From positions 1 through 64,000 of the IMG/VR virus record IMGVR_UViG_3300005289_000052: a stretch of DNA of 64,000 bases. One strand, written 5' to 3'. Positions 27,161 to 42,831 of the stretch are shown in pieces (positions within the stretch are counted from its first letter, which is position 1; the number at the start of each line of letters is the position of its first letter). The notes under the pieces were generated by a model. That model did no database searches and was not told the origin of the DNA. It saw only the letters and a program-made list of their open reading frames with translations. The position numbers and the translations under genes were made by a program.

Positions 27161-27168
27161 GGTGAACC

Positions 27169-30141
27169 ATGGCTAACCTGTCGTTAAGCGTTGAACCGGG
27201 GTACTACCTCGAAGCGCAACATGCCAATTGGGTACTCAGCTCTGAAGTTGACTTCATCAGCTTTGCACTCAACGGTGCACAACCTGCCCTGTCGAAGTAC
27301 ATCGCTTACGACACCCTGAATCCTGCTAACCCATTTATCGCCGTTACGGAAGACGGCACTGGGCGAGTGGTGTACGACGGTGGGTTTCCTAAGTTCTACA
27401 ACACCTTCGCTCCTGCGGCTGGACTTGATCCATTGTTCAGCCTAGAGTTCCGAGGGACCACCGCTGGTAACACGTCGGGTACGAACTTTTTCTACTACGA
27501 CATGTTCTGTGATACCAAGGTGACCATCGCAGCCGGTGACAAGCTGGTATACGACATCTGGACTAACGATGCTAACGCTCGTGTCGGTCTGGATGGCGTT
27601 ACCGCCAATGACCCAGCGACATTCCGTTACGCTTTGCGTGACTGGATCGATCAGACCAACCGTATCAAGGATCAGAACGGTTTGGGTTGTCACCCCGCTA
27701 CGGACCTTTCGGCTTACGCGTTGAACAAGTGGTATCACCGCGAGTTTGACCTCACTCTGTGTGCCGGTTACCGCTTCGATAAGTGGTCATTGGCTTACGA
27801 GGGTGAGAAGGCCGGTACGTTCTACACCCGGTTCAAAGAGGTGTACATCCTGGACAAGAACGGGAAGGTGAAAGCCACCCTGTTCAAGGACAAGATCCTG
27901 ATCGCCAACTCTGCAAACATTGAGGGTGGTGCATCGGGGTATACGAACATCTCCAAGACTATCTACGATCCACGTTCTCACCTGAACGCTGCTTTCAAGT
28001 ATCTGTTCAACGCCATCCGTTGGGTGTCGAAGACTTCGATGTTGGAGGCAGGGGTCAAGAAGATCCTGATCTTGGGTGACTCCTCTGGTGCGTCGAACTA
28101 CAAGGTCAAAGGTACGGCTTCCACTGACTTCTTTACCAGTTTGACCAACCTCTGTACGGCGGTTGGTTTTACTCCCACGTTTAAAGACGTGACGGACTAC
28201 GCTGGTGGGTTGTTGAATGCTACCTTGGCTGAGATGAACCAGTACGACTGTGTGTTGCTGATGGGCTCACAGAGCGGTACAGGTGCACTGATCACCACGT
28301 CGATGATTCAGGACATCCAGACCTACCGGCAACAAGGCGGTGGGATTATCATGATCACTGACCATGGTAACGATGTTCCCAACATCGGTGCTGCTTACCC
28401 ACCAAGTACGAGTACTGCGTTCTTCCACATGGTGAACGCCGTAGCAGTCAACTTCGGTGCATGGTTCTCGGGTAACTTCGACCGAGTACCAGTGAACGTT
28501 GGGTTCCTTCGCACCAACTACGGGGATCACCCTCTGTACGATGGCATGGAGAATACCGAGTCTATTGCTGCGGGCGGTTCTGAATCCAAGGTGATCATCA
28601 CCAACCCTCCACAGTATCGAGATCCTGTTCCTCCCATCGACATCTCTAAGCAAGGGGTGAATACGGTCAAGGTCATGGCTTTGTTGAAAAACGGCACCAT
28701 GGAGGCTTACAGCTTTGTCTATGTGATTGCCACTGGACAGTTGCTCAAGTTCCTTGATCCTGATGGCGTAGAGATCAACGCCCTGCCTGCCTCGTTCTCC
28801 TCTAAGGTGGACTTCAACGTTGAGGTAGTGGGTGCTGGTCTGGGTACGATTCAAGGGGACATCCAGCTCAACGGTAAAACGGTGGGTAAGTTGGCCTACA
28901 GTGATTCTGAGGGGAGTTCGCAAGCGTGGATGGCAGGTGGTTCTAACCAACTGTTCGTTAACAAAGGCGACGTCTTTACCGCTCGGATTACCAGTCCGTT
29001 CCAGTTCACGCGTAACTTGCCTGTCAATCGGTATCAGCCTAACCTCACGGGTTTGGTCACGGTGCCTGCGGTGGTGAAAGCCATGCGTGCTGATGGGTTC
29101 GGAACCACTGAGCACAACAAAGTGGTGAACGCTGGCATTCGTCAGATGAACTTGGAGTACTCGCATCTTCAATACTTGCCTAAGGGTGACTACGCACGGG
29201 ACATCATCCAGTTGCGTTCATTCTTTGGTAGCCAGTTGGAGAAGCCAGGACAACAGGTTTACATCTACCAGACGTTGGCTCAAGCCCAAGAAGCAATGGG
29301 GCGGTTGACTCCTCCTTCGGCTCGGGACGTGTTCAATACCTGGGACCGCTTCACCAACAACGAGTACTTCGTTGGCGGTGTGGGGGCTACGGGCGATGCC
29401 GCTGCTTGGCAGTGGAACGATGCGTTAGGTGCTGCGGTGCAACCGTTGAACACGGCAACGTGGAACGGCTTCATCTCTCCTGACGTGGTGGACAACTACG
29501 AACTGGATGTGGTGATCAAGTCGGACAACGCGGACGATGACTCCAACGGTCTGGTGTTGGCGTTGAATCGCGATGGTGGAATCAACCACCGTTTGATCGT
29601 AGCGTTGAACCAAGGGGGTAACTCTCCTGCGGCTTCTCACTCGATCGGGATCTACAGTGGCGCAACTACCCAACACCTGGTCTTGAATGACTTCGCTGGA
29701 CGTAAGTCCAACGCAGCGTTCCCAACTGATGGTGGATGGCGTGGGAAGTTCAGCCGTGTGAAAGTTACGCGGTCAGGCAACTACTTCAAAGTGTTGGCCA
29801 GTCAGTGGAACTCGCTTATCTTGGACCCTGCGTCCTTGATGGAATTGACACTGAACGACACCGCACTGCAAGCACAGTTCAAAGGGGCTAAGCCCTGGGG
29901 TTTCATCAACCTCTCGCAAGCACAGTCCTACTTCACCCTGCGCGGCTATAAAGGCGGTCCTCTGAAGGACGTAGTGGTGGTTGGTGCGACTGGCGCTGTG
30001 TATTACTACACCAACGGGGGTTGGGCTTTGATTCCCGGTACGACTGCTAAGGATGTCTTCGGATACCCTCGCAAGCTTACGAACCCAGAAACTGGTGCGT
30101 CGTTCATGGTTAACGCGAACGGCACGATCACCGCACTTTGA
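27169..30141 (+). CDS. Modular tail-associated/receptor-binding protein
   Basis: 990 aa; GATase-I-like segments (GRVVYDGG..FYN..NAIRW; YDCVLL..GGGIIMITDH..HPLY), CBM-like insert, lectin-like C-terminal domain; lies between two fibre genes. Confidence 0.65.
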   Translation: MANLSLSVEPGYYLEAQHANWVLSSEVDFISFALNGAQPALSKYIAYDTLNPANPFIAVTEDGTGRVVYDGGFPKFYNTFAPAAGLDPLFSLEFRGTTAGNTSGTNFFYYDMFCDTKVTIAAGDKLVYDIWTNDANARVGLDGVTANDPATFRYALRDWIDQTNRIKDQNGLGCHPATDLSAYALNKWYHREFDLTLCAGYRFDKWSLAYEGEKAGTFYTRFKEVYILDKNGKVKATLFKDKILIANSANIEGGASGYTNISKTIYDPRSHLNAAFKYLFNAIRWVSKTSMLEAGVKKILILGDSSGASNYKVKGTASTDFFTSLTNLCTAVGFTPTFKDVTDYAGGLLNATLAEMNQYDCVLLMGSQSGTGALITTSMIQDIQTYRQQGGGIIMITDHGNDVPNIGAAYPPSTSTAFFHMVNAVAVNFGAWFSGNFDRVPVNVGFLRTNYGDHPLYDGMENTESIAAGGSESKVIITNPPQYRDPVPPIDISKQGVNTVKVMALLKNGTMEAYSFVYVIATGQLLKFLDPDGVEINALPASFSSKVDFNVEVVGAGLGTIQGDIQLNGKTVGKLAYSDSEGSSQAWMAGGSNQLFVNKGDVFTARITSPFQFTRNLPVNRYQPNLTGLVTVPAVVKAMRADGFGTTEHNKVVNAGIRQMNLEYSHLQYLPKGDYARDIIQLRSFFGSQLEKPGQQVYIYQTLAQAQEAMGRLTPPSARDVFNTWDRFTNNEYFVGGVGATGDAAAWQWNDALGAAVQPLNTATWNGFISPDVVDNYELDVVIKSDNADDDSNGLVLALNRDGGINHRLIVALNQGGNSPAASHSIGIYSGATTQHLVLNDFAGRKSNAAFPTDGGWRGKFSRVKVTRSGNYFKVLASQWNSLILDPASLMELTLNDTALQAQFKGAKPWGFINLSQAQSYFTLRGYKGGPLKDVVVVGATGAVYYYTNGGWALIPGTTAKDVFGYPRKLTNPETGASFMVNANGTITAL

Positions 30142-30156
30142 TAAACAGGAAAGGTT

Positions 30157-31785
30157 ATGGGCACTATCATTGTTAAGTACCCGGAAGACCCGACGGGGAT
30201 CAACCCCAACAACCTGGTCATCAACGAGCCTCACGATCTTGGAGCAGGGCGCAATCGCGCCTTTGTTCCTAACTACGGTTCCTACTACACGGAGTCGATG
30301 ATCGTTACTGAGCTTGCGACCGGGCGGGTCCTCAAGAAGGGCGAGCACTACATCGCTGCACAGTTGCAACAAGAAGCCACGCTGGCGATGGACAAAGAGA
30401 TTTGTGCCGTTGTTGTCATCACTGACCCAAGCGTGCAAAACCAACTGCTGTTCACTTACCAAGTTGTTGGTGGTGTGTTCAGTACGTCGGTCTCTGCGTT
30501 GCAGAAAATGATCGAAGACCTCGATCTGGACGAACGGGCTGTTGAGTGGGGCGCCATCATTGGTAAGCCTACCGCATTCCCACCTGCTCCTCACCTTCAC
30601 GATATCGGCGACCTGTACGGTTTCGAATACCTCGTGGAAGCGTTGGATGCTCTGCGTAATGCTATCCTGATCGGCGACGAAGCCGCGCACGATGAATTGC
30701 GTCAGTACATCCAGTACGAGGATGGTCTCCTGCGTGCGTCGATTGCTGAGCTGAAAGGCCAGTTCGATGCTCACGCGCAGGACAAGAACAACCCGCACGG
30801 TACAACCAAAGCTCAGGTCGGACTCGGTTCGGTCGAGAACTACGGTATTGCTACCACCGCCGAGGCTCAGGCAGGCACTTCCAACGCGAAGTACATGACT
30901 CCTCTGCGTACTGCCGAAGCGATTGCTCAGCAAGCGTTGATTCCTCTGAACGCACACATTGCTGACAAGAACAACCCTCACCAAACCACCAAAGCCCAAG
31001 TTGGCTTAGGTAGTGTGGAGAACTACGGGGTTGCGACTACAGCAGAAGCACAAGCGGGTGTGAGTGACGTCAAGTACATGACGCCTTTGAAAACCAAAGA
31101 CGCCATTGCCCAACAAGCGCTCATCCCACTCAACGCTCACATCAACGATAAGAATAACCCCCACCAGACTACCAAAGCTCAGGTAGGGTTAGGCTCCGTT
31201 GAGAACTTTGCGTTGGCGACCACTGCGGAAGCCCAGGCGGGGACTTCGAACCTTAAGTACATGACACCTTTGCTCACTGCTCAGGCGATTGCACAGCAGG
31301 CTCTGATTCCCCTCAACAACCACATCGCGGATAAAAGCAACCCACACCAAACCACGAAGGCACAGGTTGGGTTGAGCGATGTAGACAACTTCGCAACGGC
31401 AACTACCGCAGAAGCTCAGGCTGGCGTTCTGAACACCAAGTTCATGACTCCCCTGCGGACCAAAGAAGCCATCGCCTTCCAAGTGGGTAACGCGCTGACT
31501 GCTCACTTGAACGACATGAACAACCCTCACAACACGACTAAAGCGCAAGTCGGTCTGAGTCTGATTCCTAACTCGATCACTCGTAGTCGGGCAACCAACT
31601 CTGACGGTTCGTTGCTTACTGCCGGGGGTATGTACGACCACGTCAACTCAGCAGACCACGATGCACGCTATGCACCGAAGAACACTGCGGGTGTAGATTG
31701 CTCTGTTCACTGGAACGGTAGTGGTGTGTACGTTTGGGGTGGTGGTGCTTGGCGTCAGGTATGGCCTGCTCAGTGGGCTGCGTAA
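30157..31785 (+). CDS. Tail-fibre-like protein 2 (phiKZ gp146-like)
   Basis: N-terminal YPEDPTG domain paralogous to 24638; 61-aa repeats; ends W.QVWP. Confidence 0.8.
   Translation: MGTIIVKYPEDPTGINPNNLVINEPHDLGAGRNRAFVPNYGSYYTESMIVTELATGRVLKKGEHYIAAQLQQEATLAMDKEICAVVVITDPSVQNQLLFTYQVVGGVFSTSVSALQKMIEDLDLDERAVEWGAIIGKPTAFPPAPHLHDIGDLYGFEYLVEALDALRNAILIGDEAAHDELRQYIQYEDGLLRASIAELKGQFDAHAQDKNNPHGTTKAQVGLGSVENYGIATTAEAQAGTSNAKYMTPLRTAEAIAQQALIPLNAHIADKNNPHQTTKAQVGLGSVENYGVATTAEAQAGVSDVKYMTPLKTKDAIAQQALIPLNAHINDKNNPHQTTKAQVGLGSVENFALATTAEAQAGTSNLKYMTPLLTAQAIAQQALIPLNNHIADKSNPHQTTKAQVGLSDVDNFATATTAEAQAGVLNTKFMTPLRTKEAIAFQVGNALTAHLNDMNNPHNTTKAQVGLSLIPNSITRSRATNSDGSLLTAGGMYDHVNSADHDARYAPKNTAGVDCSVHWNGSGVYVWGGGAWRQVWPAQWAA
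30772..31570 (+). repeat. 61-aa (183 bp) tandem repeats (4 full + 1 partial)
   Basis: H..DK.NPHQTTKAQVGLGSVEN..ATTAEAQAG....YMTPL.T..AIAQQALIPLN. Confidence 0.9.
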
Positions 31786-31838: not shown

Positions 31839-32345
31839 ATGGGTAATGTGAGTGGCTCTTTATTTGGCTGTATCACAGAGTCTACCCTACAGGTAGACGA
31901 CATCCTTAGTAGTCCTTACCCCTATGAGCAACAGCTTGTAAAGATTCTCACAGGGGACATTGTCATTGACGCTATGAGTGTTTCAGATGTCTTGGAACAC
32001 TCAGACAAGGTCATCAAGATTGAAGGGATCGAGAAACTCAATCGATCCCTGTACCAAGCTTGCAAAGACCTAGCAGAGGTTATGGAACATGATGGGCCTA
32101 TTACTTGCCATCTGTTCCTGTCTCCTGCTGGGGGTAAGAGCTTTCCTTGGCACGATGATCCCGACGACGTGTACCTGTACATGGTCGAGGGTGCTAAAAC
32201 TATGGCTGTGGGCAACGAAGTCCATAAGCTGACCAAGTGGGACCATCTCTTCATTCCACGAGGCACGCAACATAGAGCTGTGAACTATCACGCCTCGAAG
32301 ATGCTAAGCTTTGGGTTGGAGCGATTCATTGCTGAGAAGCTCTGA
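31839..32345 (+). CDS. JmjC/cupin Fe(II)-2OG oxygenase (YcfD/ROX-like minimal domain)
   Basis: FPWHDDPDDVYL..EG.K and LFIPRGTQHRA give the HxD...H triad plus a 2OG-binding Lys. Confidence 0.85.
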   Translation: MGNVSGSLFGCITESTLQVDDILSSPYPYEQQLVKILTGDIVIDAMSVSDVLEHSDKVIKIEGIEKLNRSLYQACKDLAEVMEHDGPITCHLFLSPAGGKSFPWHDDPDDVYLYMVEGAKTMAVGNEVHKLTKWDHLFIPRGTQHRAVNYHASKMLSFGLERFIAEKL

Positions 32346-33379
32346 TGACCAAAACTATTTACGTCAAAACCACCGGTACCTGTAACCTTGCGTGCAAGCA
32401 TTGCTTCACCAACGGCAAGAACGGTGATCGTACCCAATTTGATCCAGTGCAGTTCGGTGACTGGATTGAAGAGTACATGTCCAAACACCCTAAAGGGACC
32501 GAGTACCACCTCGAGTTCCATGGTGGTGAACCCTTCCTTGTTCCACTCCCTAAGCTGATCCAGCTCGCGGATCGTTTTTATGACCGTGACGGGGTGTCGA
32601 TGTGCGCCAACAGCAACTTGACGTTTAAGTTGACTGAGGAACTCATCGCCTTTATTAAGCATTACTTCTACGGACACATTGGCACCAGTTGGGACCACTG
32701 GATTCGTTGGGGTAATCAAAAACAGTTTGACCTTTGGCGGTCGAACTTGAAAACCTTGCGTGAGCGTGATGTCTGCATCTATCTCAAGGTGTCGGTGAGT
32801 CGTGAGTTGATCAAGACCACACCGGACTGGTTCTTGGACCAGATCGAAAGCTTTGGGGTAACTGAGGTTTCGTTGGAGCGTCTAACGATGGACGGCAGTG
32901 CCAACGAGAACTTGGACATCTTCCCTAACAACGAGGAACAGGACAACTGGTACCTCGAGCTGTACAAGCGATACAAGCAACGCAAACTCAACTTCAAGAT
33001 CCGAACCCTCGACATCCTTGAGCAGAAGCTTAAGTACAACGTGGTGAAGGTGGACACCAACTGTCGCAACTGTGAACAGAATCTGGTGACCATCAACTCT
33101 AACGGGACTTTGGGTGGTTGTCCGAACGTGGCCTCTGCAAGACAGCATGCTCGTTTGGAAGAAGGGGCTGATGCGTTTCTCTCCTCGGATGCTCGGGTAG
33201 AAGAGATCGCTAAGGAATTGACTTGGGGTGATGGTTGCTTGAACTGTGACGTGTTCGACTTATGCGGTGGGGATTGCCATCGCTTGCCTTGGCAGAAGGG
33301 TCGCTGTGGTGGCCTTAAGAACACGCTGAGGTATTTGTCGGGCCGTTCCACACAATCCAATTTGATCCTGAAGGTGTGA
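32345..33379 (+). CDS. Radical SAM/SPASM protein 1
   Basis: CNLACKHC, FHGGEP; C-terminal CRNC, GGCPN, CLNCDVFDLCGGDC, C. Confidence 0.93.
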   Translation: MTKTIYVKTTGTCNLACKHCFTNGKNGDRTQFDPVQFGDWIEEYMSKHPKGTEYHLEFHGGEPFLVPLPKLIQLADRFYDRDGVSMCANSNLTFKLTEELIAFIKHYFYGHIGTSWDHWIRWGNQKQFDLWRSNLKTLRERDVCIYLKVSVSRELIKTTPDWFLDQIESFGVTEVSLERLTMDGSANENLDIFPNNEEQDNWYLELYKRYKQRKLNFKIRTLDILEQKLKYNVVKVDTNCRNCEQNLVTINSNGTLGGCPNVASARQHARLEEGADAFLSSDARVEEIAKELTWGDGCLNCDVFDLCGGDCHRLPWQKGRCGGLKNTLRYLSGRSTQSNLILKV

Positions 33380-33380
33380 A

Positions 33381-33935
33381 ATGACGGACATTACAAGACA
33401 GATGGTCGCTGACCAAGCGAACGCTGTGATTCGAGGGAACGCCAACGCCGGTATCTCGTGGGGGACGAACAGCTTCCCTGCTGGTGCCCTGGCTGGTTGG
33501 TTTGGTGGGTCGACTGCGGGTAACCCCGTAGCCCTCAGTGCTGGTAGCATTGCTGCTGGCAACCTTTCGGCATCGAACGTGTCAGCGGTACTGCGTAACT
33601 TCACCAACCAGTTTGCTGCGATTCGTCGTACGCGGATTGTGGTTTATTACGCTAAGAACTGGGGTGAGGATTACATCTACTCCGGTGTTGATGTGCGCGT
33701 GGACTCTACGGCTATTGCCTATACGGCGTATCCTGCTGGCAGTCCCGGTAACAACGCAGCACTCCCTGGCTTGGCGGCAGGGGCCACTGCCTCGTGGGGT
33801 AATATGGCGGCGTGTATCAACAACCTGTGGGCACAGTACAACGAGATGTGTCGTAACACCACGTTGACACTGACCAACACCATCTGTCACTCGAGCTGCC
33901 ACGACAACTGTCACTGCAACCGTGGGCGTCGTTAA
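33381..33935 (+). CDS. Putative substrate: small Ala/Gly/Asn-rich structural-like protein with a Cys/His-rich C-terminal tail
   Basis: Ends ICHSSCHDNCHCNRGRR; sits directly after rSAM 1. Confidence 0.65.
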   Translation: MTDITRQMVADQANAVIRGNANAGISWGTNSFPAGALAGWFGGSTAGNPVALSAGSIAAGNLSASNVSAVLRNFTNQFAAIRRTRIVVYYAKNWGEDYIYSGVDVRVDSTAIAYTAYPAGSPGNNAALPGLAAGATASWGNMAACINNLWAQYNEMCRNTTLTLTNTICHSSCHDNCHCNRGRR

Positions 33936-33945
33936 GGAGTCCTCA

Positions 33946-34692
33946 ATGTCTGAAGAAAAACCTCTGGTCCAAGTTGAGGTCACTGCTCCGATTCCTCTGG
34001 ACGTGCTCAAGCGCAAGTTCAAAGAGAACATCGAGTTCGTTATCGACTACGATGCGAGCAAGCTTAAGGGTAAGGTGTTGATCACCTACCTGAGCAACCT
34101 CAAGATCAAGTGTCGCCTGAAACTGACTGACCAGTCTGTTGCACTGGCGTTGGTGGAAGAGTACCTGAACATTCCGGTACTGGTCGATATGTCAGACCTT
34201 GAAGACTTGGCGATGGACATTCTGTTGGCCTACACAGGCAAGCCGAACCGCATCGCTGTGGACCTGTCTGACTTCTTCGTTCGTAACAAGGAAGCACTGG
34301 ACCGTTGGGTACGTCGTCTGTACTCCATTCCTCTGTACGCTTTGTGGTCGATGGAGCAGTACAAGTCCGAGGTAGAGAAATTCCCAGTGGACGAGGAAGA
34401 TACCATTGCTGGTGTCAACTTCGTGATGCTGATCGCTCACCCTGACTTTGCCGTCTTCATGGAAAACGTTCAAGAGGACCAATACACTTGGTGCCCAACG
34501 TTCTTCAAGGAGTACGTGTTCCAGGGTAGCAACCTCTTCAACTTCTTTGCTGACGAGCGCAACCCGTTCTTCGTGGGACTTCTGGCCATCCAGAGTCCTG
34601 AAATGTTTAACGAGATCGCACCGAAAGTCCAAAAGGCTTACGACGATTCCGTGGCCCTCATGAAAGGTATCGAGCATGTACCATCTCTTTAA
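33946..34692 (+). CDS. Hypothetical protein in the rSAM operon
   Basis: AGGAG RBS, start MSEEK, overlaps the next gene. Confidence 0.8.
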   Translation: MSEEKPLVQVEVTAPIPLDVLKRKFKENIEFVIDYDASKLKGKVLITYLSNLKIKCRLKLTDQSVALALVEEYLNIPVLVDMSDLEDLAMDILLAYTGKPNRIAVDLSDFFVRNKEALDRWVRRLYSIPLYALWSMEQYKSEVEKFPVDEEDTIAGVNFVMLIAHPDFAVFMENVQEDQYTWCPTFFKEYVFQGSNLFNFFADERNPFFVGLLAIQSPEMFNEIAPKVQKAYDDSVALMKGIEHVPSL

Positions 34693-35731
34693 CTCGGTGT
34701 ATGTAGACCTCGAGCGCCGCATCAACCGCACGGTCGACAACATCACCATCTCGCCGTACATTGGTCTGGAGTATTTCCCAGGCCAGAACGAAACTGCTGG
34801 TCGTCAGATCGGTTACGCCAAGACCATGGAATCGGTTGAACCCGAAGTCCTGATCGGCTGGTTCAAAGAAGCCATGCTGTCCAAAGAGAAGACCTTCATC
34901 TTCTGCGACGGCACCACCTACATGCGGTTGTACTCCATGTTGGTGAAAGCGGTACTGCCCAAGGTGGACCTCGAAACCTTCAAGTGGATCTGGCTCTGCA
35001 AGAAGGCAACCTTCAACACTTCGTTGACCAACTGGAAACAGCCTGGCAACAACGTGCTGGATGGTTTGGAGATCACCACCGAAACCGTCGAGATGATGTT
35101 CAACCTCGACGACCCTCATCAAGAGGCCTTCACTGCACTGCTCGCCGGTAACGACGATGTAGTCTCACTGGAGTGGCATATCCTGCGTCTGGCGGCTATC
35201 GGTTACGTGGGCATCGTTCCTAAGCGTCTGAAACACATCCTGCGTCGTATCGCTCTGGCGAACACTCATGATGCACTCGATGTTTGGGGTCGTGTGATCA
35301 CTGATCCTGAACACTGGGAATACGCTGGCGCTGACCGTGACACCCTGCTCGATGCTCCTAGTGTGTTCCAAGGTGCACTGAACCTTCACTTTACCAACAA
35401 CCCGATCTTCTTGAAGCCTGGGCTGTTCGTGAAGCATCCTCAAGATGCGTGGCTCTGCAACCTGCTGGAAGAACTGCACCCGTTGCTCGAGCGTGTAGGT
35501 GAGGGTCCAACTGCCAAGCGTACGTTGAAGATCCTGAGCTTCCTGCGAGACCTCAACCCGCTGTCCGATCCAGGTAAGTGTCTGGAACGCTGCCGTGACT
35601 TCTTTGTTGGTATTGATCGGCTGGCCATGCCAAACCGTGACTCCAGCAAGTACGACGAAAACCTGATCCGTTATATCCTCAGTCGTGACCAGGCAGATCT
35701 GGCACGCATGTTTGAAGGGGCAACTTGGTGA
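34676..35731 (+). CDS. Hypothetical protein in the rSAM operon
   Basis: 351 aa, overlaps both neighbours. Confidence 0.8.
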   Translation: MYHLFNSVYVDLERRINRTVDNITISPYIGLEYFPGQNETAGRQIGYAKTMESVEPEVLIGWFKEAMLSKEKTFIFCDGTTYMRLYSMLVKAVLPKVDLETFKWIWLCKKATFNTSLTNWKQPGNNVLDGLEITTETVEMMFNLDDPHQEAFTALLAGNDDVVSLEWHILRLAAIGYVGIVPKRLKHILRRIALANTHDALDVWGRVITDPEHWEYAGADRDTLLDAPSVFQGALNLHFTNNPIFLKPGLFVKHPQDAWLCNLLEELHPLLERVGEGPTAKRTLKILSFLRDLNPLSDPGKCLERCRDFFVGIDRLAMPNRDSSKYDENLIRYILSRDQADLARMFEGATW

Positions 35732-36735
35732 ATTTAATCCCGGTGGTAGACGTACTAGCGGACAAGAAAGGCGCAACGAAAGAAGCACACCTGATCTTGT
35801 TCGAGAAGTGTAACCTGCGTTGTTCGTTCTGCCACCAGGACCACGATTCAACCGTAGGTTTGGATGCGGATGAGATCATGCGTAAAGGGATCAGGCTCGT
35901 TGAGTCCTCAGACCTTGAAGCACCGATCGTTATCAACATCACTGGCGGCGAGTTGTTTACCGACGACATCGAAGACTGGATGTTTGGGTACTACCTGTCC
36001 TTGGGTGAGTACCTGCTGCAAAACTTCAAACGCGCTAAGATTGTCTACGGGACGAACTTGGTGTACGAGAAGGTATGGCGTGTCGAGCGACTGATGACCA
36101 TGTTGAGCGCTCATAGCTCTCCTAGTCAAGGGGTTAGCTTGTCGACGTCATACGACCCCGCAGGCCGGTTCAATCCAGCACAGCGGGAATTGTTCTTCAA
36201 GAACTTGGAACGGGTTGGCCTTTGGGTTGACACGGTAAACGTGGTAATCACTAAACAGAACATCGACGTCTTCCTGAACGACCGTGAGGGCGTTGAGGTG
36301 AAAGATCTGGCGTACGACTACGATCTGTATTTTGATCATTACATACCAAGCGAAAGATATGAAGAGCACCAACCTACTGAGTCACAGATCCGTCAACTCT
36401 ATTTGAAGCTGGCGAAGAAGTATCCTCTCTCGTATCCCATTGCCTCCTGGAAAAACCAGCAGTTCAATGAGACGACTTGTCGTTCCACCAAGATCATCAA
36501 CAAAGATGGTGTGGTGACTACGTGCTGGTCGGAAGCGGGGAAGGATGCGATCCTTGACGAAGGTGAAGGGTTGGTTGCTAAACAATCGGCGGAAGAACGG
36601 TTTATCGAACATTACGGGTGTTTGTCGTGTGAGTATTACCAACGCTGCGGTTTGCGTTGTTTCCTCCACCACAGCTTTATCGAAGGCTCTTCCACAGAGT
36701 GTGAGATCAAGCTCCTGTTCGACGAAATCTTGTAG
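35725..36735 (+). CDS. Radical SAM protein 2 (twitch/SPASM-like C-terminus)
   Basis: CNLRCSFC, ITGGELF, TTCRS, TTCW, CLSCEYYQRCGLRC, EC. Confidence 0.92.
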   Translation: MVNLIPVVDVLADKKGATKEAHLILFEKCNLRCSFCHQDHDSTVGLDADEIMRKGIRLVESSDLEAPIVINITGGELFTDDIEDWMFGYYLSLGEYLLQNFKRAKIVYGTNLVYEKVWRVERLMTMLSAHSSPSQGVSLSTSYDPAGRFNPAQRELFFKNLERVGLWVDTVNVVITKQNIDVFLNDREGVEVKDLAYDYDLYFDHYIPSERYEEHQPTESQIRQLYLKLAKKYPLSYPIASWKNQQFNETTCRSTKIINKDGVVTTCWSEAGKDAILDEGEGLVAKQSAEERFIEHYGCLSCEYYQRCGLRCFLHHSFIEGSSTECEIKLLFDEIL

Positions 36736-36741
36736 CCCAGG

Positions 36742-36774
36742 GCCGGTGGATAAAACCACCGGCTTTGTGCCGTC
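36742..36774 (+). terminator. Intra-operon hairpin followed by variant motif TTTGTGCCGTC
   Basis: GCCGGTGG-ATAAAA-CCACCGGC-TTTGTGCCGTC. Confidence 0.6.
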
Positions 36775-36788
36775 ACTAAGGGGTTAGT

Positions 36789-37877
36789 ATGGATCTCATT
36801 ATAAAGCCAACCGTGAAATGTAACTTCAAGTGCACGTTCTGTTCGAGCACGCACTTGTCAGAAGAACCGAAAGACATTGTCGAGTTGGCTGATATCGAAG
36901 CCTTCTTGAAGCGTTACCCCGACACCCGGACCATCATCGTTAACGGTGGTGATCCATTGATGATGCCACCCAAGTACTACTGGGACATGATCGAGATCCT
37001 AGACCGTTTGGACATGGACACTGTCATCTCCTTTACCACGAACCTGTGGGCGTTCTACAAGAAACCTGAACTGTGGGCTCCGTTGTTTAAGCTGGATCGG
37101 ATTGGTGTCAACACCTCGTTCCAGTACGGCGACAAACGTCTCAAGGGAGACGGTACTCCTCTGACTGAGGATGAGTTCATTGCGATCTCTGATCTGTTCT
37201 TGGAGAAGGTTGGGTATCGTCCAGACTTCATTGCGGTGATTGACCAAGACAACGTTGACACGGTCATCCCGACGGTAGAGTTGGCTAAGCGCCTAGGTCT
37301 GGAGGCGAAGATCAACTACGTCTCTGCATCTGGTCCTGAGGTTGTGAATCGCGGTGTGGTAATGGGGAGCATCAACAACTTCTACACTCAAGCTGACATG
37401 TACGAACAATACATCAAGATCTACGACGCAGGTCTGATGGAGTGGGAGTACAACACCAAGCAGATGTCTCGTCGCTTGAAGTTTGGTAACACGACTTGTC
37501 CTTTGGCCCGGTCCTGCGATGAAGGCATCCGTGCGTTACAACCTGGGCAGACGTACTTCTCTTGTGGTAGTTTCGGGGATGATGGCGAATACCCGATTGA
37601 CTTCCAGAAAGAGATGGCGGGTGAGTTCTTCACGCCTTTGCAAGTCGTTCCTGAATTGGATTCGATGAAAGATGCGTGCTACACCTGCCCGATGTTCAGC
37701 ATCTGTAATGGATGTCGTAAGACTGTGGCTGACACTAAACGCTTTGGACTCACGGAGTACCACTGCAAGAAGATGAAGTCACTTGCTCCACGCATCATCG
37801 AGATCAACGGCATGACGGGGTTGTTGGAACCCACCCCTTACGTTGATGAATCCGTCCAGATCATTGCAAGGGGCTAA
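36789..37877 (+). CDS. Radical SAM/SPASM protein 3 (anSME-like)
   Basis: IKPTVKCNFKCTFC, NGGDPLMM, CPLARSC, FSCG, CYTCPMFSICNGC, HC. Confidence 0.94.
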   Translation: MDLIIKPTVKCNFKCTFCSSTHLSEEPKDIVELADIEAFLKRYPDTRTIIVNGGDPLMMPPKYYWDMIEILDRLDMDTVISFTTNLWAFYKKPELWAPLFKLDRIGVNTSFQYGDKRLKGDGTPLTEDEFIAISDLFLEKVGYRPDFIAVIDQDNVDTVIPTVELAKRLGLEAKINYVSASGPEVVNRGVVMGSINNFYTQADMYEQYIKIYDAGLMEWEYNTKQMSRRLKFGNTTCPLARSCDEGIRALQPGQTYFSCGSFGDDGEYPIDFQKEMAGEFFTPLQVVPELDSMKDACYTCPMFSICNGCRKTVADTKRFGLTEYHCKKMKSLAPRIIEINGMTGLLEPTPYVDESVQIIARG

Positions 37878-37878
37878 C

Positions 37879-38070: not shown

Positions 38071-38447
38071 CTCACGAAGTAAAAGACAATGTTCACCTGA
38101 TCCATGGATTGATTGACACTCAGACCGGTGCCGACCCAATCTGCGTCTACATCGACAAGGAAAGCTTGGTCGACATGTTGGAGGACATCGTTCACAACGT
38201 GGTGACAGTGCGTTACTGGATCAGCAGTAATCCGCTGAAGACTGTGGAGGAAGCAGACATGCAAACCCTCGAACAGGTCAACGGTTATCTGGATGCTGAG
38301 ATCCAACATCGTTACTCAGACATCACCGGTTACTTGTGGACCGATGAACACTTCAAGGTGGGTGGTCATGACCTGATCCCAATCTTTGAAGAGGCCGAAG
38401 AGAAGTACCTCCTACTGGAAATCACGGTCCATGAAAAGTCCGATTAA
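38067..38447 (+). CDS. Acidic hypothetical protein in the rSAM operon
   Basis: 126 aa from MTHEV; coupled on both sides. Confidence 0.75.
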   Translation: MTHEVKDNVHLIHGLIDTQTGADPICVYIDKESLVDMLEDIVHNVVTVRYWISSNPLKTVEEADMQTLEQVNGYLDAEIQHRYSDITGYLWTDEHFKVGGHDLIPIFEEAEEKYLLLEITVHEKSD

Positions 38448-39366
38448 CCTCAGTCTCAACCTGACCTACTACTGTAACTTCAAGTGTGAGTTCTGTTACC
38501 TCACGCCTGAACAGTTGCGAGATCGTCAACGTCTGCCTCTGGACATTCTGGAGCAGCAGCTAGACAAGGTCCTGGAGCAATACGACGTACATCACGTAGA
38601 CATCTACGGTGGTGAGGTCATGGTGTTGCCGAAGGACTATCTGTTCCAAGTGCGTGACATCCTTCATGCTCGAGGCATCGACGACCTGGTGTTGATCACT
38701 AACGGGTCTGTCCTCAACGAAGTAACCTCGTGTATGGACTTCGACCTGAGCATCTCCTACGACCTCACAGCGCGTGAGAGAAGCGATTGGGTACTGGGCA
38801 ACATCTTTATGCTCGATCGTCCCTTCTCGATGCTTACGCTGGCTTCTAGGAAGTTCCTGGACACGGTTACGCCTGACGACTACGTTCAAGAGCTGAACAT
38901 GCTCAATGGGATGAAGTGTGCAGAGATCAAACCGTACTCTTCAAACCAAGCCAACCAACAAAGCGTGAGTTACAAAGAGTTCGAGGACTTCGTTTGGGCT
39001 GTGATCAATCACCCTGATCGACAGTTCTACTTCGAGAACCGCACGCAAGTCAAAGAGGCGGCAGAAGGTAAGCGTAACGCTTATAGTGACGATCACCTGT
39101 ACATCACACCGAAGGGTGAGTTTGCAGTGCTCGAGTTCGATCACAACGACCATGAGTTCTTCTTAAGGATGGACTCCCTCCATGACTACCGTAACTGGTG
39201 TCAGGTCGAACGATTCCGTGTGGAGGGCAACCTGTTCTGCGGTGCGTGCCCTTACAAAGGAGGCTGCCTGTCGGAACACTTACGCGACGTGAAGTCCTTG
39301 GACAACTCCTGTAATGGATTCCGAGGACTCCTAGACAGGTGGGTAGAACATGCAGGTTCAACATAG
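38431..39366 (+). CDS. Radical SAM protein 4
   Basis: CNFKCEFC, IYGGEV, CGACPYKGGC, SC; start MKSPI. Confidence 0.92.
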   Translation: MKSPINLSLNLTYYCNFKCEFCYLTPEQLRDRQRLPLDILEQQLDKVLEQYDVHHVDIYGGEVMVLPKDYLFQVRDILHARGIDDLVLITNGSVLNEVTSCMDFDLSISYDLTARERSDWVLGNIFMLDRPFSMLTLASRKFLDTVTPDDYVQELNMLNGMKCAEIKPYSSNQANQQSVSYKEFEDFVWAVINHPDRQFYFENRTQVKEAAEGKRNAYSDDHLYITPKGEFAVLEFDHNDHEFFLRMDSLHDYRNWCQVERFRVEGNLFCGACPYKGGCLSEHLRDVKSLDNSCNGFRGLLDRWVEHAGST

Positions 39367-40354
39367 GCAGCGTTTGGAAATCACCCTCGATATCTTTCGG
39401 GGGTGTGGTCATCACTGTGTCGGGTGTATGATCGACAAACAGTTGGGTGGTGAGGTCAGCGACATTCCTGAACTACTCCAACTGATTGAGGAAATGACAG
39501 CCGTGGGTTACGTCGCCTTTGACTTAGGTGTCGGACCTACTGACTACATGTCCTCTGACAACGTTCAAGACGTGATGGGCAATGAGACCTTCCAAGCGAT
39601 GGCTCAACTGTTCCATCAGGTTACGTTCAACGCAGCGTTCTTGGAAAAGGATCTGGAGAAGTACGAAGCGATGTGCCAAGACATTGATCTGGCGTGTCCT
39701 GGTAAACCGATCCGCTTCCTGATCCCTGCTGCACCGACCTTCTTTAAGAACGAGAAGTTCGGCAACATGATCGTGCAGAAGCTCGAACACATCAAGGCCA
39801 CGTTCCAATCAGCGTTCCTCAATGAGGCAGGCTTTGTGGTGACGTGTAACCATGAAACGATGGACGAGAACTTTGACGCTAACATGCGCAATGGATTTGA
39901 TGTTGAGTTCCCTGTGGACAAAGACGACATCTTAAACATTCCGTATGGTCGTACCAAGAACCTTGACCTGATGGTGGGTCAACGGGTCAAGCGGGTCTCG
40001 CACCAGATCAGTGAGTTCTATGCAGGACTGGAAGGGGAAGACGAGCGTCGCAAGAACCCAGATTTGCACTACGACACAGGCACGATGGTTAACCTGTTGT
40101 ACACTGGTGGAAAGCTGTACTGGGTTCCCTTCCTTAAAGACGACTGTCCGTTCATACACGACGAGTTTGTCGTTCCGAGGCCCTGGACTATGGATAACCT
40201 TCTGCGCGTGCGTAACAGCGCTATGGAGCGTTCTGTGGAGTATCTCCAAGGCACCGAGTGTCTGAACTGTGTGCACTTCGCCAGTTGCATGGAGAAAGGC
40301 ATCAGTACCATCATGCAGAAGCTTTCGATTCGCGATTGCCTAGTGGGGTTGTGA
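39350..40354 (+). CDS. Non-canonical radical SAM-like protein 5
   Basis: CGHHCVGC, GVGPTD in place of GGE, C-terminal CLNCVHFASC..C. Confidence 0.75.
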   Translation: MQVQHRQRLEITLDIFRGCGHHCVGCMIDKQLGGEVSDIPELLQLIEEMTAVGYVAFDLGVGPTDYMSSDNVQDVMGNETFQAMAQLFHQVTFNAAFLEKDLEKYEAMCQDIDLACPGKPIRFLIPAAPTFFKNEKFGNMIVQKLEHIKATFQSAFLNEAGFVVTCNHETMDENFDANMRNGFDVEFPVDKDDILNIPYGRTKNLDLMVGQRVKRVSHQISEFYAGLEGEDERRKNPDLHYDTGTMVNLLYTGGKLYWVPFLKDDCPFIHDEFVVPRPWTMDNLLRVRNSAMERSVEYLQGTECLNCVHFASCMEKGISTIMQKLSIRDCLVGL

Positions 40355-41406
40355 TGTTTGCGCTCAGGATTTCCAAATCGTTTAACCTCTCCTTAGAAAT
40401 CCTTAAGGGGTGCGGGTTCAGTTGCCCTGGGTGTACAGTTGAGAAGAACTTTGCTCCCATGGAAATCCCAGAAGCAGACGCTCAGGCTCTGTTGGCTCTC
40501 GTGGATGAATTGAAAGCTGATGACTTCCGACTGTTGGAATTGAAGTTAGGTCCCACTGACATCACCAGCTCTGACAACGGCTTTGCAGCAATGCAACACC
40601 CGTTCGTTAAAGAGATGGCGTTACGGTACAAAGCTTTGAACATCAGCCACCCCATGCTTCATGATCGTGGGTTTGTGGAACTGGCTCAGTTGATTGATGA
40701 ACTGATCCCAGGTAAAAAGCTCAGCGTCGGTGTTCCAATGACGTTGAAGAATATACAGAACCCGAAATATATGGCGCTGGTTAAACAGCACATCGCGTTG
40801 TTCAAAAGTCTGCTTAAGAAAGTCGACTTCAACCGTGTGTATGCAACCTTCAACGTGATCGAAGACAACTTGGAGAACCTGTCCGTAGAGAGTTACGAGC
40901 AGGCACACCAGATGGATTTAGGTGACGTTGGGATTGTGGTGGAGTTTCCTTTCGCCCACTCTCGCCAAGGGATGGATAACTTGCTGGTGTTGGACAGATT
41001 CCGTCGGGACCTGTACCACTTCACCGAGTTCATTAAAGAACGGGCTAACACTAAAAGCTTTCGACCACTGCAACCTGCTGTGTTGAGCGGGATTGAGTTC
41101 ACGTACCGGGCTGGGTCTTTGTACTCTACTCCGGTGCTGGTTGAGAACTTGCCGATCTTCCATCCTGATTTCGAGTTACCCAAACCTTGGAGCGCATCTG
41201 AACTGATGTCGTTCTTGGAGAATCGTTACTACGATAACCTCATCGAGTTTGCAGACCACCCTGAGTGTGGGAACTGCTGCTTCCTCGACAACTGTGCTCG
41301 TGGTGATGTTCACCGCATCATGAAGCTGGTAGGACGTGACACCTGTCTGACTGGCACTAAGAACCGCTGGGACTTGATCCTAGTAGAGGATGGCCTGAAT
41401 GATTAA
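40354..41406 (+). CDS. Non-canonical radical SAM-like protein 6 (paralog of 5)
   Basis: CGFSCPGC, KLGPTD, C-terminal CGNCCFLDNC..C; TGATG overlap; start MFALR. Confidence 0.75.
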   Translation: MFALRISKSFNLSLEILKGCGFSCPGCTVEKNFAPMEIPEADAQALLALVDELKADDFRLLELKLGPTDITSSDNGFAAMQHPFVKEMALRYKALNISHPMLHDRGFVELAQLIDELIPGKKLSVGVPMTLKNIQNPKYMALVKQHIALFKSLLKKVDFNRVYATFNVIEDNLENLSVESYEQAHQMDLGDVGIVVEFPFAHSRQGMDNLLVLDRFRRDLYHFTEFIKERANTKSFRPLQPAVLSGIEFTYRAGSLYSTPVLVENLPIFHPDFELPKPWSASELMSFLENRYYDNLIEFADHPECGNCCFLDNCARGDVHRIMKLVGRDTCLTGTKNRWDLILVEDGLND

Positions 41407-41854
41407 CCCAAACGATTGCTTTGCGATCATGGATCACATACCGGTTCCAGAAGAAATGGAACTGTGGTGCATGTGTCAACCTGACAAAACCACTGTGGAC
41501 GATGATCGCATTGTCGATTACGTTTGGGACGTTCTGCTCCCCGCTCTGCGTAGCCTGCCAAACCATCCGATGGACTTGGCTAACATCCGACCGTGTGCTT
41601 ACCACGTCAATCTGTCCACCAACGGAGTAACGCCCCACAATCACTTACCGCACGCTTTAACGACGGTGCTGTACGTGACAGACGCTGATGGCGCTCTCGT
41701 CGTAGAACCGTGTTCTGAGAAGCCTCACAAGGTGTATCCGCGCCGTGGTCGCATGGTAGTGATGCACGGTTCAACTATGCATGGTGTTGAGCCTTCCTTC
41801 GACGAACAATTCCGCATCTCACTGGTCGTTAGCTATGAATTCCCAACCACATAA
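41399..41854 (+). CDS. Fe(II)/2OG oxygenase (TIGR02466-like)
   Basis: PHNH....TTVLYV, GRMVVMHG...HGV, RISLV. Confidence 0.8.
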   Translation: MINPNDCFAIMDHIPVPEEMELWCMCQPDKTTVDDDRIVDYVWDVLLPALRSLPNHPMDLANIRPCAYHVNLSTNGVTPHNHLPHALTTVLYVTDADGALVVEPCSEKPHKVYPRRGRMVVMHGSTMHGVEPSFDEQFRISLVVSYEFPTT

Positions 41855-42272
41855 GCAGTACCAAGAGCTGTACCAGATGGTGGTCACCGACCACACCGAT
41901 GACTTCTCTCTGATGGAGTTCGTTGAAGACGACGAACTGTTGGAGAATGCCAAGAACTACTTCCGTAAGGCTGAGTTCCCTCTGGTGTATCCGGCGAAGT
42001 CGATGGCCGTGGCTGTGATCTACGCCTTGCTGCTTGAAGAAACCTACGCCATCAATCCGTTTGACTCGTTGCGAGACTTGGATCTGTTCTTAGGACAGGA
42101 CCAATACTTCCACGTTTATGACGAACATCCAGAAGAGTACGATGCCTTGCTCGAATGGGTACTCAGTCACGAGAACTGGAAGGAGATGGGTTGGGCTCCG
42201 AAGACTGTGGAATACTTCCGACTGGAGTGTACCGCAGAAGGCATTCAGGAAGTCATGGAGAAACTTGGATGA
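41835..42272 (+). CDS. Acidic hypothetical protein in the rSAM operon
   Basis: 145 aa from MNSQP; coupled on both sides. Confidence 0.75.
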   Translation: MNSQPHKQYQELYQMVVTDHTDDFSLMEFVEDDELLENAKNYFRKAEFPLVYPAKSMAVAVIYALLLEETYAINPFDSLRDLDLFLGQDQYFHVYDEHPEEYDALLEWVLSHENWKEMGWAPKTVEYFRLECTAEGIQEVMEKLG

Positions 42273-42829: not shown

Positions 42830-42831
42830 CC

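What the first reader, a model, noticed from the sequence alone, without database searches (positions are those of the whole stretch)
33381..33935. Putative substrate ending in a period-4 C-H-x-x core (CHSS-CHDN-CHCN-RGRR)
Four of the protein's six Cys and all three His lie in the last 16 aa (33885-33932). The H-S-S, H-D-N and H-C-N triplets fit the aromatic-X-X pattern cross-linked by triceptide/His-Xaa-Ser rSAM maturases. The Cys spacing recalls SCIFF/ranthipeptide cores. The ~165-aa body has two similar segments (LSAGSIAAGNLSASNVSAVLRNF; LAAGATASWGNMAACINNLW) that resemble small phage tail proteins rather than a RiPP leader, suggesting a structural protein with a built-in modifiable tip.
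Basis: partly seen in the sequence, partly recalled or inferred. Interest (0 to 1): 0.85.

Follow-up and report, generated by a model that had tools for sequence, protein, structure and literature searches.

The report
Phage fibre-tip protein matured by radical-SAM enzymes
A small phage protein ends in an invariant Cys-His-x-Ser x3 + RGRR tail and is always encoded among radical-SAM and oxygenase genes, usually right after the tail-fibre genes, which points to an undescribed, enzyme-matured tip on a fibre-class protein found in many phages and in predatory bacteria.

Summary
The ORF and its tail are real: 33381-33935 (+), 184 aa, with the tail at 33885-33932. The conserved unit is C-H-x-[S/N] repeated three times, followed by R-G-R-R and the stop. 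C179 is not conserved.

The tail marks a large, unnamed family, with 556 clusters at 50% identity. Bodies are highly divergent, yet they model as a confident fold that has no PDB match.

A back-translated tail pattern found at least 120 viral loci and 27 loci in bacterial assemblies, mostly Bdellovibrionota. About 0.001 matches were expected by chance.

- Every locus with enough flank (41 of 41) carries phrog_1802 radical-SAM/SPASM genes.
- The usual gene order is fibre, JmjC-like cupin, rSAM, X, p249, p351, then more rSAMs and 2OG oxygenases.
- One relative fuses the tail to an S74 fibre chaperone domain. Another fuses a glycine-rich fibre domain to the N-terminus.

Best reading: a fibre-class, probably trimeric protein whose distal tip is modified by the co-encoded enzymes. 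The chemistry is unknown. It could be a cyclophane, a thioether, or an anSME-like Cys oxidation.

No enzyme or substrate reaches any curated family cut-off. The main rival is an unmodified metal-binding tip. I found no experimental literature on the family.

The parts
33381..33935 (+). X: 184-aa protein with a folded alpha/beta body (residues 1-168) and a C-terminal tail. Distant relatives fall in phrog_35144 (unknown function).
   Evidence: ORF. AF2 model has pLDDT 86.5 and pTM 0.81, with the tail below 50. 28 homologues and 556 clusters at 50% identity. No Pfam or NCBIfam hit. No PDB fold or sequence match.
33885..33932 (+). Tail: (C-H-x-S/N) x3 followed by R-G-R-R at the extreme C-terminus. 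This is the proposed site of maturation or metal binding.
   Evidence: Invariant columns. Tail logo from 129 profile-found representatives. Pattern scans.
32345..33379 (+). rSAM1: radical-SAM/SPASM enzyme, with CX3CX2C at residue 13 and eight invariant C-terminal Cys. It has no N-terminal RRE domain and lies directly upstream of X.
   Evidence: Pfam, NCBIfam and PHROG hits (phrog_1802, 2.3e-53). Motifs. Ortholog profile is closest to anSME 4K36-39 (E 1.6e-11). An rSAM lies directly upstream of X in 67 of 104 loci that have upstream flank.
31839..32345 (+). Cupin / JmjC_2-like Fe(II)/2OG oxygenase with a conserved H-x-D...H triad and a conserved Lys.
   Evidence: Pfam Cupin_2 at 7.8e-8 and JmjC_2 at 7.8e-7. 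Conserved residues. Present in 68 of 123 loci, normally as cupin-rSAM1-X.
33943..34692 (+). p249: the most widespread non-enzyme partner (phrog_20767). High-confidence model with no PDB fold match and few invariant residues.
   Evidence: PHROG hit. Present in 106 of 123 loci. AF2 pLDDT 93.8. Best Foldseek PDB match has E 0.32. Conserved columns.
34676..35731 (+). p351: conserved partner of unknown function.
   Evidence: Present in 71 of 123 loci. No Pfam, NCBIfam or PHROG hit.
35725..36735 (+). rSAM2: radical-SAM enzyme with a full SPASM domain.
36789..37877 (+). rSAM3: radical-SAM enzyme with a SPASM-like domain.
38386..39366 (+). rSAM4: radical-SAM enzyme with a shorter Cys-rich C-terminal domain. 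The real start is probably the internal ATG near 38431.
39350..40354 (+). rSAM5: has CX3CX2C (CGHHCVGC) and C-terminal Cys, but no Pfam hit.
40258..41406 (+). rSAM6: has CX3CX2C (CGFSCPGC) and falls in phrog_31457.
41399..43386 (+). Three 2OG-Fe(II) oxygenase genes (41399-41854, 42155-42829, 42832-43386) and p163 (41781-42272, phrog_20737).
   Evidence: Pfam hits, PHROG hit, synteny.
24638..31785 (+). Three tail-fibre-like genes directly upstream of the cassette (24638-27160, 27169-30141, 30157-31785).
   Evidence: PHROG hits phrog_2163, phrog_13857 and phrog_11065. The same fibre families precede the cassette in an unrelated 36-kb contig, L158.

Best explanation
X is a fibre-class protein of a DT01-like jumbo phage. 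It is probably trimeric and exposed on the virion.

- **Body.** The roughly 168-residue body evolves quickly and is most likely the part specific to each phage or host.
- **Tail.** The invariant flexible C-terminal tip, (C-H-x-S/N)x3-RGRR, is the substrate of the co-encoded maturation enzymes. These are six anSME-like radical-SAM/SPASM paralogues that lack RRE domains, a JmjC-like cupin, and three 2OG oxygenases.
- **Likely chemistry (inferred).** A radical-SAM enzyme abstracts an H atom at a beta-carbon within each four-residue unit. This would give one of three outcomes: a His-to-Ser/Asn cyclophane, a Cys thioether, or an anSME-type Cys oxidation. The Fe/2OG enzymes may add hydroxyl groups to His, Asn or Arg. 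The result would be a rigid, chemically unusual tip at the distal end of the protein.

**Shown:**
- the conserved motif;
- its strict genomic coupling to the enzymes;
- the usual placement next to fibre genes;
- the fibre-type domain fusions.

**Inferred:**
- that the tail is modified at all;
- which bonds are formed;
- that X forms trimers;
- that X is present in virions.
For: **Tail conservation.** The tail is invariant across 37-89% identical homologues. It is near-invariant in 129 of 150 representatives found by profile search. Bodies average only 14% column identity.

**Coupling to enzymes.**
- 130 of 143 loci fetched by the tail pattern have a phrog_1802-type rSAM within 6 kb.
- All 41 fully flanked loci have one, and all 13 misses are truncated loci.
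- In contrast, only 15 of 50,697 cultured-phage records contain an rSAM1 homologue. The three that I inspected (DT01, RSF1, Atu_ph07) each carry X right after it.
- Gene order is conserved in about 100 loci and in chromosomal Bdellovibrionota copies.

**Substrate-like behaviour.** X occurs as tandem pairs, and relatives carry 2 to 4 consecutive units, or five separate blocks.

**Structure.** The tail has low model confidence on a well-folded body.

**Enzymes.** They are SPASM-type with no RRE domain. The closest solved structure is the protein-modifying anSME.

**Fibre link.**
- The cassette follows fibre or baseplate genes in unrelated phages.
- P0173 carries the tail immediately before an S74 intramolecular chaperone that begins SDERLK (PF13884, 44.8 bits against a cut-off of 22).
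- P0127 fuses a Gly_rich_2 domain to X. Both fusions keep the cassette.
- X, p249 and p351 diverge as fast as the fibres (37-59% identity), while the rSAMs stay at 56-76%.
Against: - There is no mass-spectrometric or structural evidence that the tail is modified.
- No enzyme reaches any curated maturase cut-off.
- An invariant core on a hypervariable body is the opposite of the usual RiPP pattern.
- X is annotated only as a hypothetical protein in cultured phages. I found no virion proteomics that detects it.
- Cys/His layers on a three-fold axis could simply bind metal.
- In some loci, such as L161, no fibre gene precedes the cassette.
- Bdellovibrionota copies sit next to housekeeping genes.
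Confidence: 0.5

Rival explanations
1. The tail is an unmodified metal-binding tip. In a trimer, the three Cys-His layers would line the three-fold axis and bind Fe or Zn, as the HxH layers do in the T4 gp37 needle. The radical-SAM enzymes would act on something else, such as p249, p351, the fibres or a small molecule.
For: - Cys and His alternate with period 4, so they would fall on one face of a helix. AF2 suggests a helix at 174-179, though at low confidence.
- The S74 fusion in P0173 places the repeats where trimeric fibre stalks end.
- Metal sites on fibre axes are established for T4 gp37 and gp12 (my own knowledge).
Against: - This does not explain the near-invariant S/N at position 4 of every unit, nor the RGRR end.
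- It does not explain the strict adjacency of X to an rSAM, including translational-coupling distance.
- It does not explain the multi-block tails.
Confidence: 0.22
2. X is a RiPP or cofactor precursor. The folded body would act as a large leader, comparable to the nitrile-hydratase-like leaders of proteusins. The heavily tailored 16-residue tail would be cut off and released as a small molecule such as a metallophore, cofactor or toxin.
For: - The core sits at the C-terminus.
- Many tailoring enzymes are present, including B12-rSAMs in some loci and 2OG oxygenases.
- Invariant cores are typical of cofactor-type RiPPs such as PQQ and mycofactocin (my own knowledge).
- Some loci, such as L161, are not preceded by fibre genes.
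Against: - No protease or exporter is recognisable in the cassette.
- A leader needed for enzyme recognition should be conserved, but the body is the most variable part.
- The S74 and glycine-rich fusions point to a structural protein.
Confidence: 0.12
3. X is an accessory to the enzymes. It could be an Fe-S or metal donor, an electron carrier, or a docking scaffold whose tail ligates the SPASM auxiliary clusters, rather than being their substrate.
For: - The tail has three Cys and three His, and six cluster-rich enzymes must be loaded.
- Substrate Cys is known to ligate an auxiliary cluster in CteB-type enzymes (my own knowledge).
Against: - X resembles no known scaffold or ferredoxin.
- Its hypervariable body, tandem duplication and fibre-type fusions do not fit a housekeeping helper.
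Confidence: 0.06

Closest known systems
Anaerobic sulfatase-maturating enzyme (anSME) acting on the C/S-x-P/A-x-R motif of sulfatases
   Same: - The rSAM1 ortholog profile aligns over its full length to anSME structures 4K36-39 (E 1.6e-11).
- It has the same compact architecture: CX3CX2C near the N-terminus, no RRE domain, and eight Cys for two fully ligated auxiliary clusters.
- It would act on a folded protein rather than a leader peptide.
- The last tail unit, C-H-x-S-R, has Cys with Arg at +4, like C-x-P-S-R.
   Different: - The TIGR03942 score is 47 bits against a cut-off of 349.
- X has no sulfatase domain.
- There are three tandem units, each with an invariant His and no Pro or Ala.
- Six paralogous rSAMs and several oxygenases are present instead of one enzyme.
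Triceptides and the His-Xaa-Ser (HxsA-D) system: three-residue cyclophanes made by rSAM/SPASM enzymes
   Same: Each unit contains H-x-S/N, which matches the aromatic-X-X3 pattern. The enzymes are SPASM-type. ChlB, a solved rSAM that I recall as a cyclophane synthase, is the second-best solved match (9gm3).
   Different: - The repeat has period 4 with an invariant Cys, not period 3.
- YhhB, AmcB, FxsB, GrrM, HxsB and HxsC scores are 7- to 20-fold below their cut-offs.
- No HxsA- or HxsD-like protein is present.
- The substrate is a 125-310-aa folded phage protein.
CXXX-repeat radical-SAM target system (NCBIfam TIGR04115 maturase; Pfam 38.1 PF27846 'tSAM_targ_Cxxx_rpt')
   Same: The substrate has period-4 Cys repeats next to rSAM/SPASM genes. 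PF27846 is carried by half the members of a viral 308-aa cluster that is among X's nearest ESM-Atlas neighbours. This is only a lead, with a score of 0.5-0.56.
   Different: The TIGR04115 score is 16.6 bits against a cut-off of 350. PF27846 is not in the local Pfam copy, so membership could not be tested.
Quinohemoprotein amine dehydrogenase gamma subunit (QhpC) matured by the SPASM enzyme QhpD
   Same: This is a precedent for an rSAM/SPASM enzyme installing Cys cross-links in a small folded protein subunit rather than a released peptide (my own knowledge). There is a weak TIGR03906 hit.
   Different: There is no homology to X, and the score is 22 bits against a cut-off of 453. In QhpC the partners of the Cys residues are Asp and Glu, and the system is not viral.
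Phage tail fibres with S74 or G2 intramolecular chaperone domains, and the metal-binding T4 gp37 needle
   Same: - The cassette sits after fibre genes.
- Relative P0173 ends in an S74 domain directly after the repeats.
- The periodic His/Cys layers recall the HxH iron sites of gp37 (my own knowledge).
   Different: - The window's X ends in RGRR with no chaperone domain.
- The body has no fibre-like repeats or beta-helix, and no fold match.
- The coupling to rSAM genes has no counterpart in known fibres.

Membership tests
Triceptide (three-residue cyclophane) RiPPs | The precursor carries aromatic/His-X-X3 motifs. | tested here: met
   H-S-S, H-D-N and H-C-N in the window. H-x-[S/N] is conserved family-wide.
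Triceptide (three-residue cyclophane) RiPPs | The maturase belongs to a curated cyclophane-forming rSAM/SPASM family (YhhB, AmcB, FxsB, GrrM/OscB). | tested here: not met
   YhhB 39.9 bits against 445, AmcB 37.8 against 425, FxsB 31.1 against 370, GrrM 24 against 310.
Triceptide (three-residue cyclophane) RiPPs | An aryl-C to C-beta cross-link is present in the product. | not testable with these tools
   This needs MS/MS or NMR.
His-Xaa-Ser system (HxsA-D) | Paired maturases HxsB and HxsC are present, together with HxsD. | tested here: not met
   HxsB 25.2 bits against 370, and HxsC at most 23.3 against 267.9. No cassette protein hits HxsD.
His-Xaa-Ser system (HxsA-D) | There is an HxsA-type target with tandem period-3 H-x-S repeats. 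| tested here: not met
   The period is 4, with an invariant Cys. None of 44 diverse X proteins hits any NCBIfam model.
SCIFF / ranthipeptides | There is a SCIFF- or PapB-type maturase. | tested here: not met
   PapB scores 45.9 bits against a cut-off of 340. The SCIFF maturase model is not among the hits.
SCIFF / ranthipeptides | The core is a short Cys-rich peptide with acceptor residues, for example Cys-X3-Asp. | tested here: not met
   X is 184 aa and folded. The residue at +4 is the next Cys, and there is no conserved acidic acceptor.
CXXX-repeat rSAM target system | The target carries period-4 Cys repeats. | tested here: met
   C169, C173 and C177 are invariant.
CXXX-repeat rSAM target system | A TIGR04115 maturase is present. 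| tested here: not met
   The only hit is rSAM2, at 16.6 bits against a cut-off of 350.
CXXX-repeat rSAM target system | The target matches Pfam PF27846. | not testable with these tools
   The model is absent from the local Pfam copy. It was seen only as a label on an Atlas neighbour cluster.
anSME / sulfatase maturation | The rSAM has a full SPASM domain (eight Cys) and no RRE domain. | tested here: met
   The best solved match is anSME.
anSME / sulfatase maturation | The enzyme scores above the TIGR03942 cut-off, and the substrate is a sulfatase with C/S-x-P/A-x-R. | tested here: not met
   The score is 47.2 bits against 349.45. X has no sulfatase domain. Only the last unit resembles the motif (C-H-x-S-R).
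Tail fibres with an S74 intramolecular chaperone | A C-terminal Peptidase_S74 domain is present. | tested here: not met
   The window's X ends in RGRR with no Pfam hit. The feature is met only in relative P0173.

The most novel reading that the evidence does not exclude
Many phages build the distal tip of a small trimeric fibre or adhesin protein from a radical-SAM-installed, cross-linked or oxidised (Cys-His-x-Ser)n motif. Predatory Bdellovibrionota do the same next to their own fibre and adhesin genes. This would be a new class of enzymatic post-translational modification of virion or predation-apparatus proteins, used for attachment to or penetration of prey cells.
Probability: 0.3. Interest if true: 0.9.

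Novelty: new variant of a known kind. Interest (0 to 1): 0.8.

Why it matters
- **Where these enzymes are known to act.** Radical-SAM/SPASM maturases are known from peptide natural products and a few cellular enzymes. They are not known from virion proteins.
- **What the cassette contains.** It has up to six rSAM paralogues, a JmjC-like cupin and several 2OG oxygenases. All are tied to one invariant 16-residue tail on a fast-evolving fibre-class protein.
- **How widespread it is.** It appears in jumbo phages of Pseudomonas, Ralstonia, Burkholderia and Agrobacterium. It also appears in marine T4-like and small uncultured phages, and in Bdellovibrionota chromosomes.
- **What it would mean for phage biology.** If the tail is modified, this is a new protein chemistry at the host-contact end of phages. 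It would bear on adsorption, host range and the stability of therapeutic and biocontrol jumbo phages.
- **What it would mean for enzymology.** The system would be tractable: a short, invariant substrate with many paralogous enzymes.
- **What it clarifies now.** These rSAM genes have been listed in jumbo-phage genome papers as 'DNA repair / host-metabolism' genes.

Tried and rejected
- **Family libraries.** Pfam, NCBIfam and PHROG scans of X found nothing. The exception is phrog_35144, of unknown function, which matches distant relatives.
- **Fold and sequence searches.**
  - Foldseek against PDB found no match for X or p249.
  - The PDB sequence or profile search found nothing for X or for rSAM1 as a single sequence.
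- **ESM Atlas.** It gave only low-score leads.
- **Cultured phages.** tblastn with two other X subfamilies found no match.
- **Literature.**
  - There are no papers containing the tail strings.
  - There is nothing functional on the rSAM clusters of DT01, RSF1, FLC6, S13 or RP31.
  - There is nothing in the jumbo-phage comparative review.
  - A later search on RiPP classes and phage terms also returned nothing relevant.
  - Haft and Basu 2011 could not be retrieved.
- **Internal duplication of the body.** Rejected.
- **Regulatory signals.** Promoter and terminator scans gave no more than chance. There are no DNA tandem repeats in the fibre genes.
- **Fibre C-terminal domain.** A shared C-terminal domain in the upstream fibres (A.YADLAEKY..., G2-like) is common but not universal. 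It is absent from the window's fibre.
- **DNA hypermodification as the rSAM role.** I considered this and set it aside, because the enzymes are SPASM-type and the cassette is embedded in the fibre module.

Full report
**1. The observation**

The ORF 33381-33935 (+) encodes 184 aa. Its ATG lies 1 nt after the stop of an upstream radical-SAM gene and follows a GAAGGTG ribosome-binding site.

The last 16 residues (nt 33885-33932) read CHSS-CHDN-CHCN-RGRR. They hold four of the six Cys and all three His. A run of two or more C-H-x-x units occurs nowhere else in the six-frame translation of the window.

**2. Conservation of the tail**

The only cultured-phage relative is gp065 of Pseudomonas jumbo phage pPa_SNUABM_DT01. 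It is 37% identical and ends ICHTSCHTSCHSARGRR.

A search of 5.8 billion proteins gave 28 homologues. In the alignment, C169, H170, S172, C173, H174, C177, H178, R181, G182, R183 and R184 are invariant, while C179 is not.

A profile search of 1.84 billion cluster representatives gave 556 clusters at E <= 1e-3. Among 129 tails found by profile, the logo is [V/I]-C-H-x-[S>N]-C-H-x-[S>N]-C-H-x-[S>N,A]-R-[G>S]-R-R.

Variants have two or four units, R-x-R-R endings, or a four-unit tail followed by GDGPGGGG.

**3. Spread of the motif**

The back-translated tail plus stop has a chance probability of about 2^-49 per position (my arithmetic). That predicts about 1e-3 matches or fewer in either collection.

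- It matched 27 loci in bacterial assemblies, mostly Bdellovibrionota MAGs, including contigs of 2.4-2.8 Mb.

The ORFs that end in the tail are 125-310 aa. They fall into two large body groups: proteins of about 140-275 aa, and tandem pairs of about 127 aa. Mean column identity across 44 diverse members is 14%, apart from the tail itself.

No Pfam or NCBIfam model hits any of the 44. Distant members hit phrog_35144, which has no assigned function.

**4. The protein**

With the family alignment, AlphaFold2 gives a confident alpha/beta body (pLDDT 86.5, pTM 0.81). Residues 170-184 score below 50-70.

Foldseek finds no PDB match. In the viral library it finds only relatives, including Atu_ph07 gp170, which ends FCHSSCHASCHNSRSRR.

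**5. Coupling to enzymes**

The window's + strand block reads as follows:

| Order | Gene | Coordinates |
|---|---|---|
| 1 | Three fibre-like genes | 24638-31785 |
| 2 | JmjC-like cupin | 31839-32345 |
| 3 | rSAM1 | 32345-33379 |
| 4 | X | 33381-33935 |
| 5 | p249 | 33943-34692 |
| 6 | p351 | 34676-35731 |
| 7 | rSAM2 to rSAM6 | 35725-41406 |
| 8 | Three 2OG oxygenases and p163 | 41399-43386 |

An HMM built from the six window rSAMs finds at least one rSAM within 6 kb of X in 130 of 143 pattern-fetched loci. It finds one in all 41 loci that have at least 4 kb downstream and at least 1.2 kb upstream. All 13 misses have less than 2.1 kb of downstream sequence.

The order cupin-rSAM1-X-p249-p351-rSAM2-rSAM3-rSAM4-p163 recurs in about 100 loci. 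A second arrangement, X-X-rSAM-p249-rSAM x3, carries related enzymes.

For comparison, only 15 of 50,697 cultured-phage records contain an rSAM1 homologue. I inspected three of them (DT01, RSF1 and Atu_ph07). Each shows cupin or a hypothetical gene, then the rSAM, then X.

**6. The enzymes**

- All six have CX3CX2C within the first 11-52 residues, so none has an RRE domain.
- rSAM1 and rSAM2 have full SPASM motifs.
- Eight SPASM-region Cys are invariant in rSAM1 orthologues.
- The rSAM1 profile is closest to anSME (4K36-39, E 1.6e-11, full length). ChlB, 8vpo and CteB follow.
- Every NCBIfam hit is far below its cut-off, including anSME, PapB, YhhB, AmcB, DynA, DarE, HxsB/C and the CXXX-repeat maturase.
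- The cupin family keeps an H-x-D...H triad and a Lys.
- Some relatives add B12-binding rSAMs.

**7. Link to fibres**

- In a marine T4-like contig the cassette follows baseplate-wedge and fibre genes.
- In 9 of 10 diverse loci the gene directly upstream is a large protein with a fibre-type C-terminal domain.
- In the 36-kb contig L158 the upstream genes belong to the same fibre PHROGs as in the window.
- P0173 consists of the X body, four C-H-x-S units, a 9-residue linker, and an S74 intramolecular chaperone that begins SDERLK (PF13884, 44.8 bits against a cut-off of 22). P0127 consists of a Gly_rich_2 domain followed by X. Both keep the cassette.
- Chromosomal copies are also next to fibre- or adhesin-like genes. 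In a Pseudobdellovibrio-like contig the cassette lies beside S74-bearing proteins. In a Bacteriovoracaceae contig it lies beside a 2355-aa Big_2/RCC1 protein.
- Between the window and DT01-like phages, the rSAMs are 56-76% identical. X (37-59%), p249 and p351 diverge as fast as the fibres.

**8. Interpretation**

The data fit a fibre-class protein whose invariant flexible tip is a substrate for the co-encoded enzymes. S74 domains are known to sit at the ends of trimeric fibres and to be cut off, which exposes the preceding residues as the distal tip (my own knowledge). In P0173 that would make the C-H-x-S repeats the tip.

Conservation of C, H and S/N in every unit is compatible with three chemistries:

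- His-to-Ser/Asn cyclophanes of the triceptide type;
- Cys thioethers;
- anSME-like Cys oxidation.

JmjC or 2OG hydroxylation could be added on top. None of these can be chosen in silico.

The main rival is an unmodified Cys/His metal site on a three-fold axis. Lesser rivals are a released RiPP or cofactor, and a helper role for the rSAMs.

**9. Novelty**

I found no functional description of the family. The DT01 paper merely lists the six rSAM genes under DNA repair and host metabolism.

An ESM-Atlas neighbour cluster carries Pfam 38.1 PF27846 'tSAM_targ_Cxxx_rpt'. Curators may therefore already have flagged a related CXXX-repeat target family. That model is not in the local Pfam copy and could not be tested.

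I rate this a new variant of a known kind: an rSAM/SPASM enzyme paired with a Cys-rich C-terminal substrate. What is unusual is the phage fibre setting and the multi-enzyme cassette.

Noticed in passing
L154:1-20609 and L153:1-20684: Chromosomal copies of the whole cassette occur in Bdellovibrionota, on contigs over 1 Mb. They sit next to type IV pilus genes or lspA on one side. On the other side lie S74-chaperone proteins, one with a pilin-type N-methylation motif, or a 2355-aa Big_2/RCC1 surface protein.
   Followed up: partly
L138:3910-4266 and protein P0031: These X relatives have tails made of five blocks of CHxSCHxS(CHSN), separated by VPV or VV, before the final ARGRR. One comes from a contig of a Dysosmobacter segnis (Bacillota) isolate.
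   Followed up: partly
L143:2152-3879, L156:5306-6952, L161:16420-17985: B12-binding radical-SAM genes (521-575 aa) join the cassette in some lineages. In L143 the gene lies directly upstream of X.
   Followed up: no
window 30157-31785: The fibre-like protein directly upstream of the cassette contains about four tandem 62-aa protein repeats (DKNNPHxTTKAQVGLGSVENY...ATTAEAQAG...KYMTPL...AIAQQALIPLNAHI). They are too diverged for Tandem Repeats Finder to detect at the DNA level.
   Followed up: partly
L015, L023, L049, L053, L054, L055, L057, L064, L077, L125 (genes upstream of the cassette): Fibres upstream of the cassette share a C-terminal domain of about 120 aa (A.YADLAEKY...GVIS..PA.LMN...GRVPV.V.G..KGD). 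It matches phrog_22593, phrog_6427 and phrog_19602, and weakly matches Peptidase_G2. The window, DT01 and RSF1 fibres lack it.
   Followed up: partly
window 44147-45706: This gene encodes a phiKZ-like internal head protein (PF12699). Together with synteny to DT01, it marks the window as part of a DT01-like jumbo phage. The closest X homologues come from compost metagenomes and from a 242-kb contig labelled Streptomyces sp. CHB9.2.
   Followed up: no
window 33943-34692 (p249): This is the most widespread partner of X. Its model is very confident (pLDDT 93.8), yet it has no PDB fold match and only three invariant residues (Y49, N52, G157). Its function is unexplained.
   Followed up: partly
ESM Atlas neighbours of X: Pfam 38.1 lists PF27846 'tSAM_targ_Cxxx_rpt' on a viral 308-aa cluster. 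The local Pfam copy lacks this model.
   Followed up: partly
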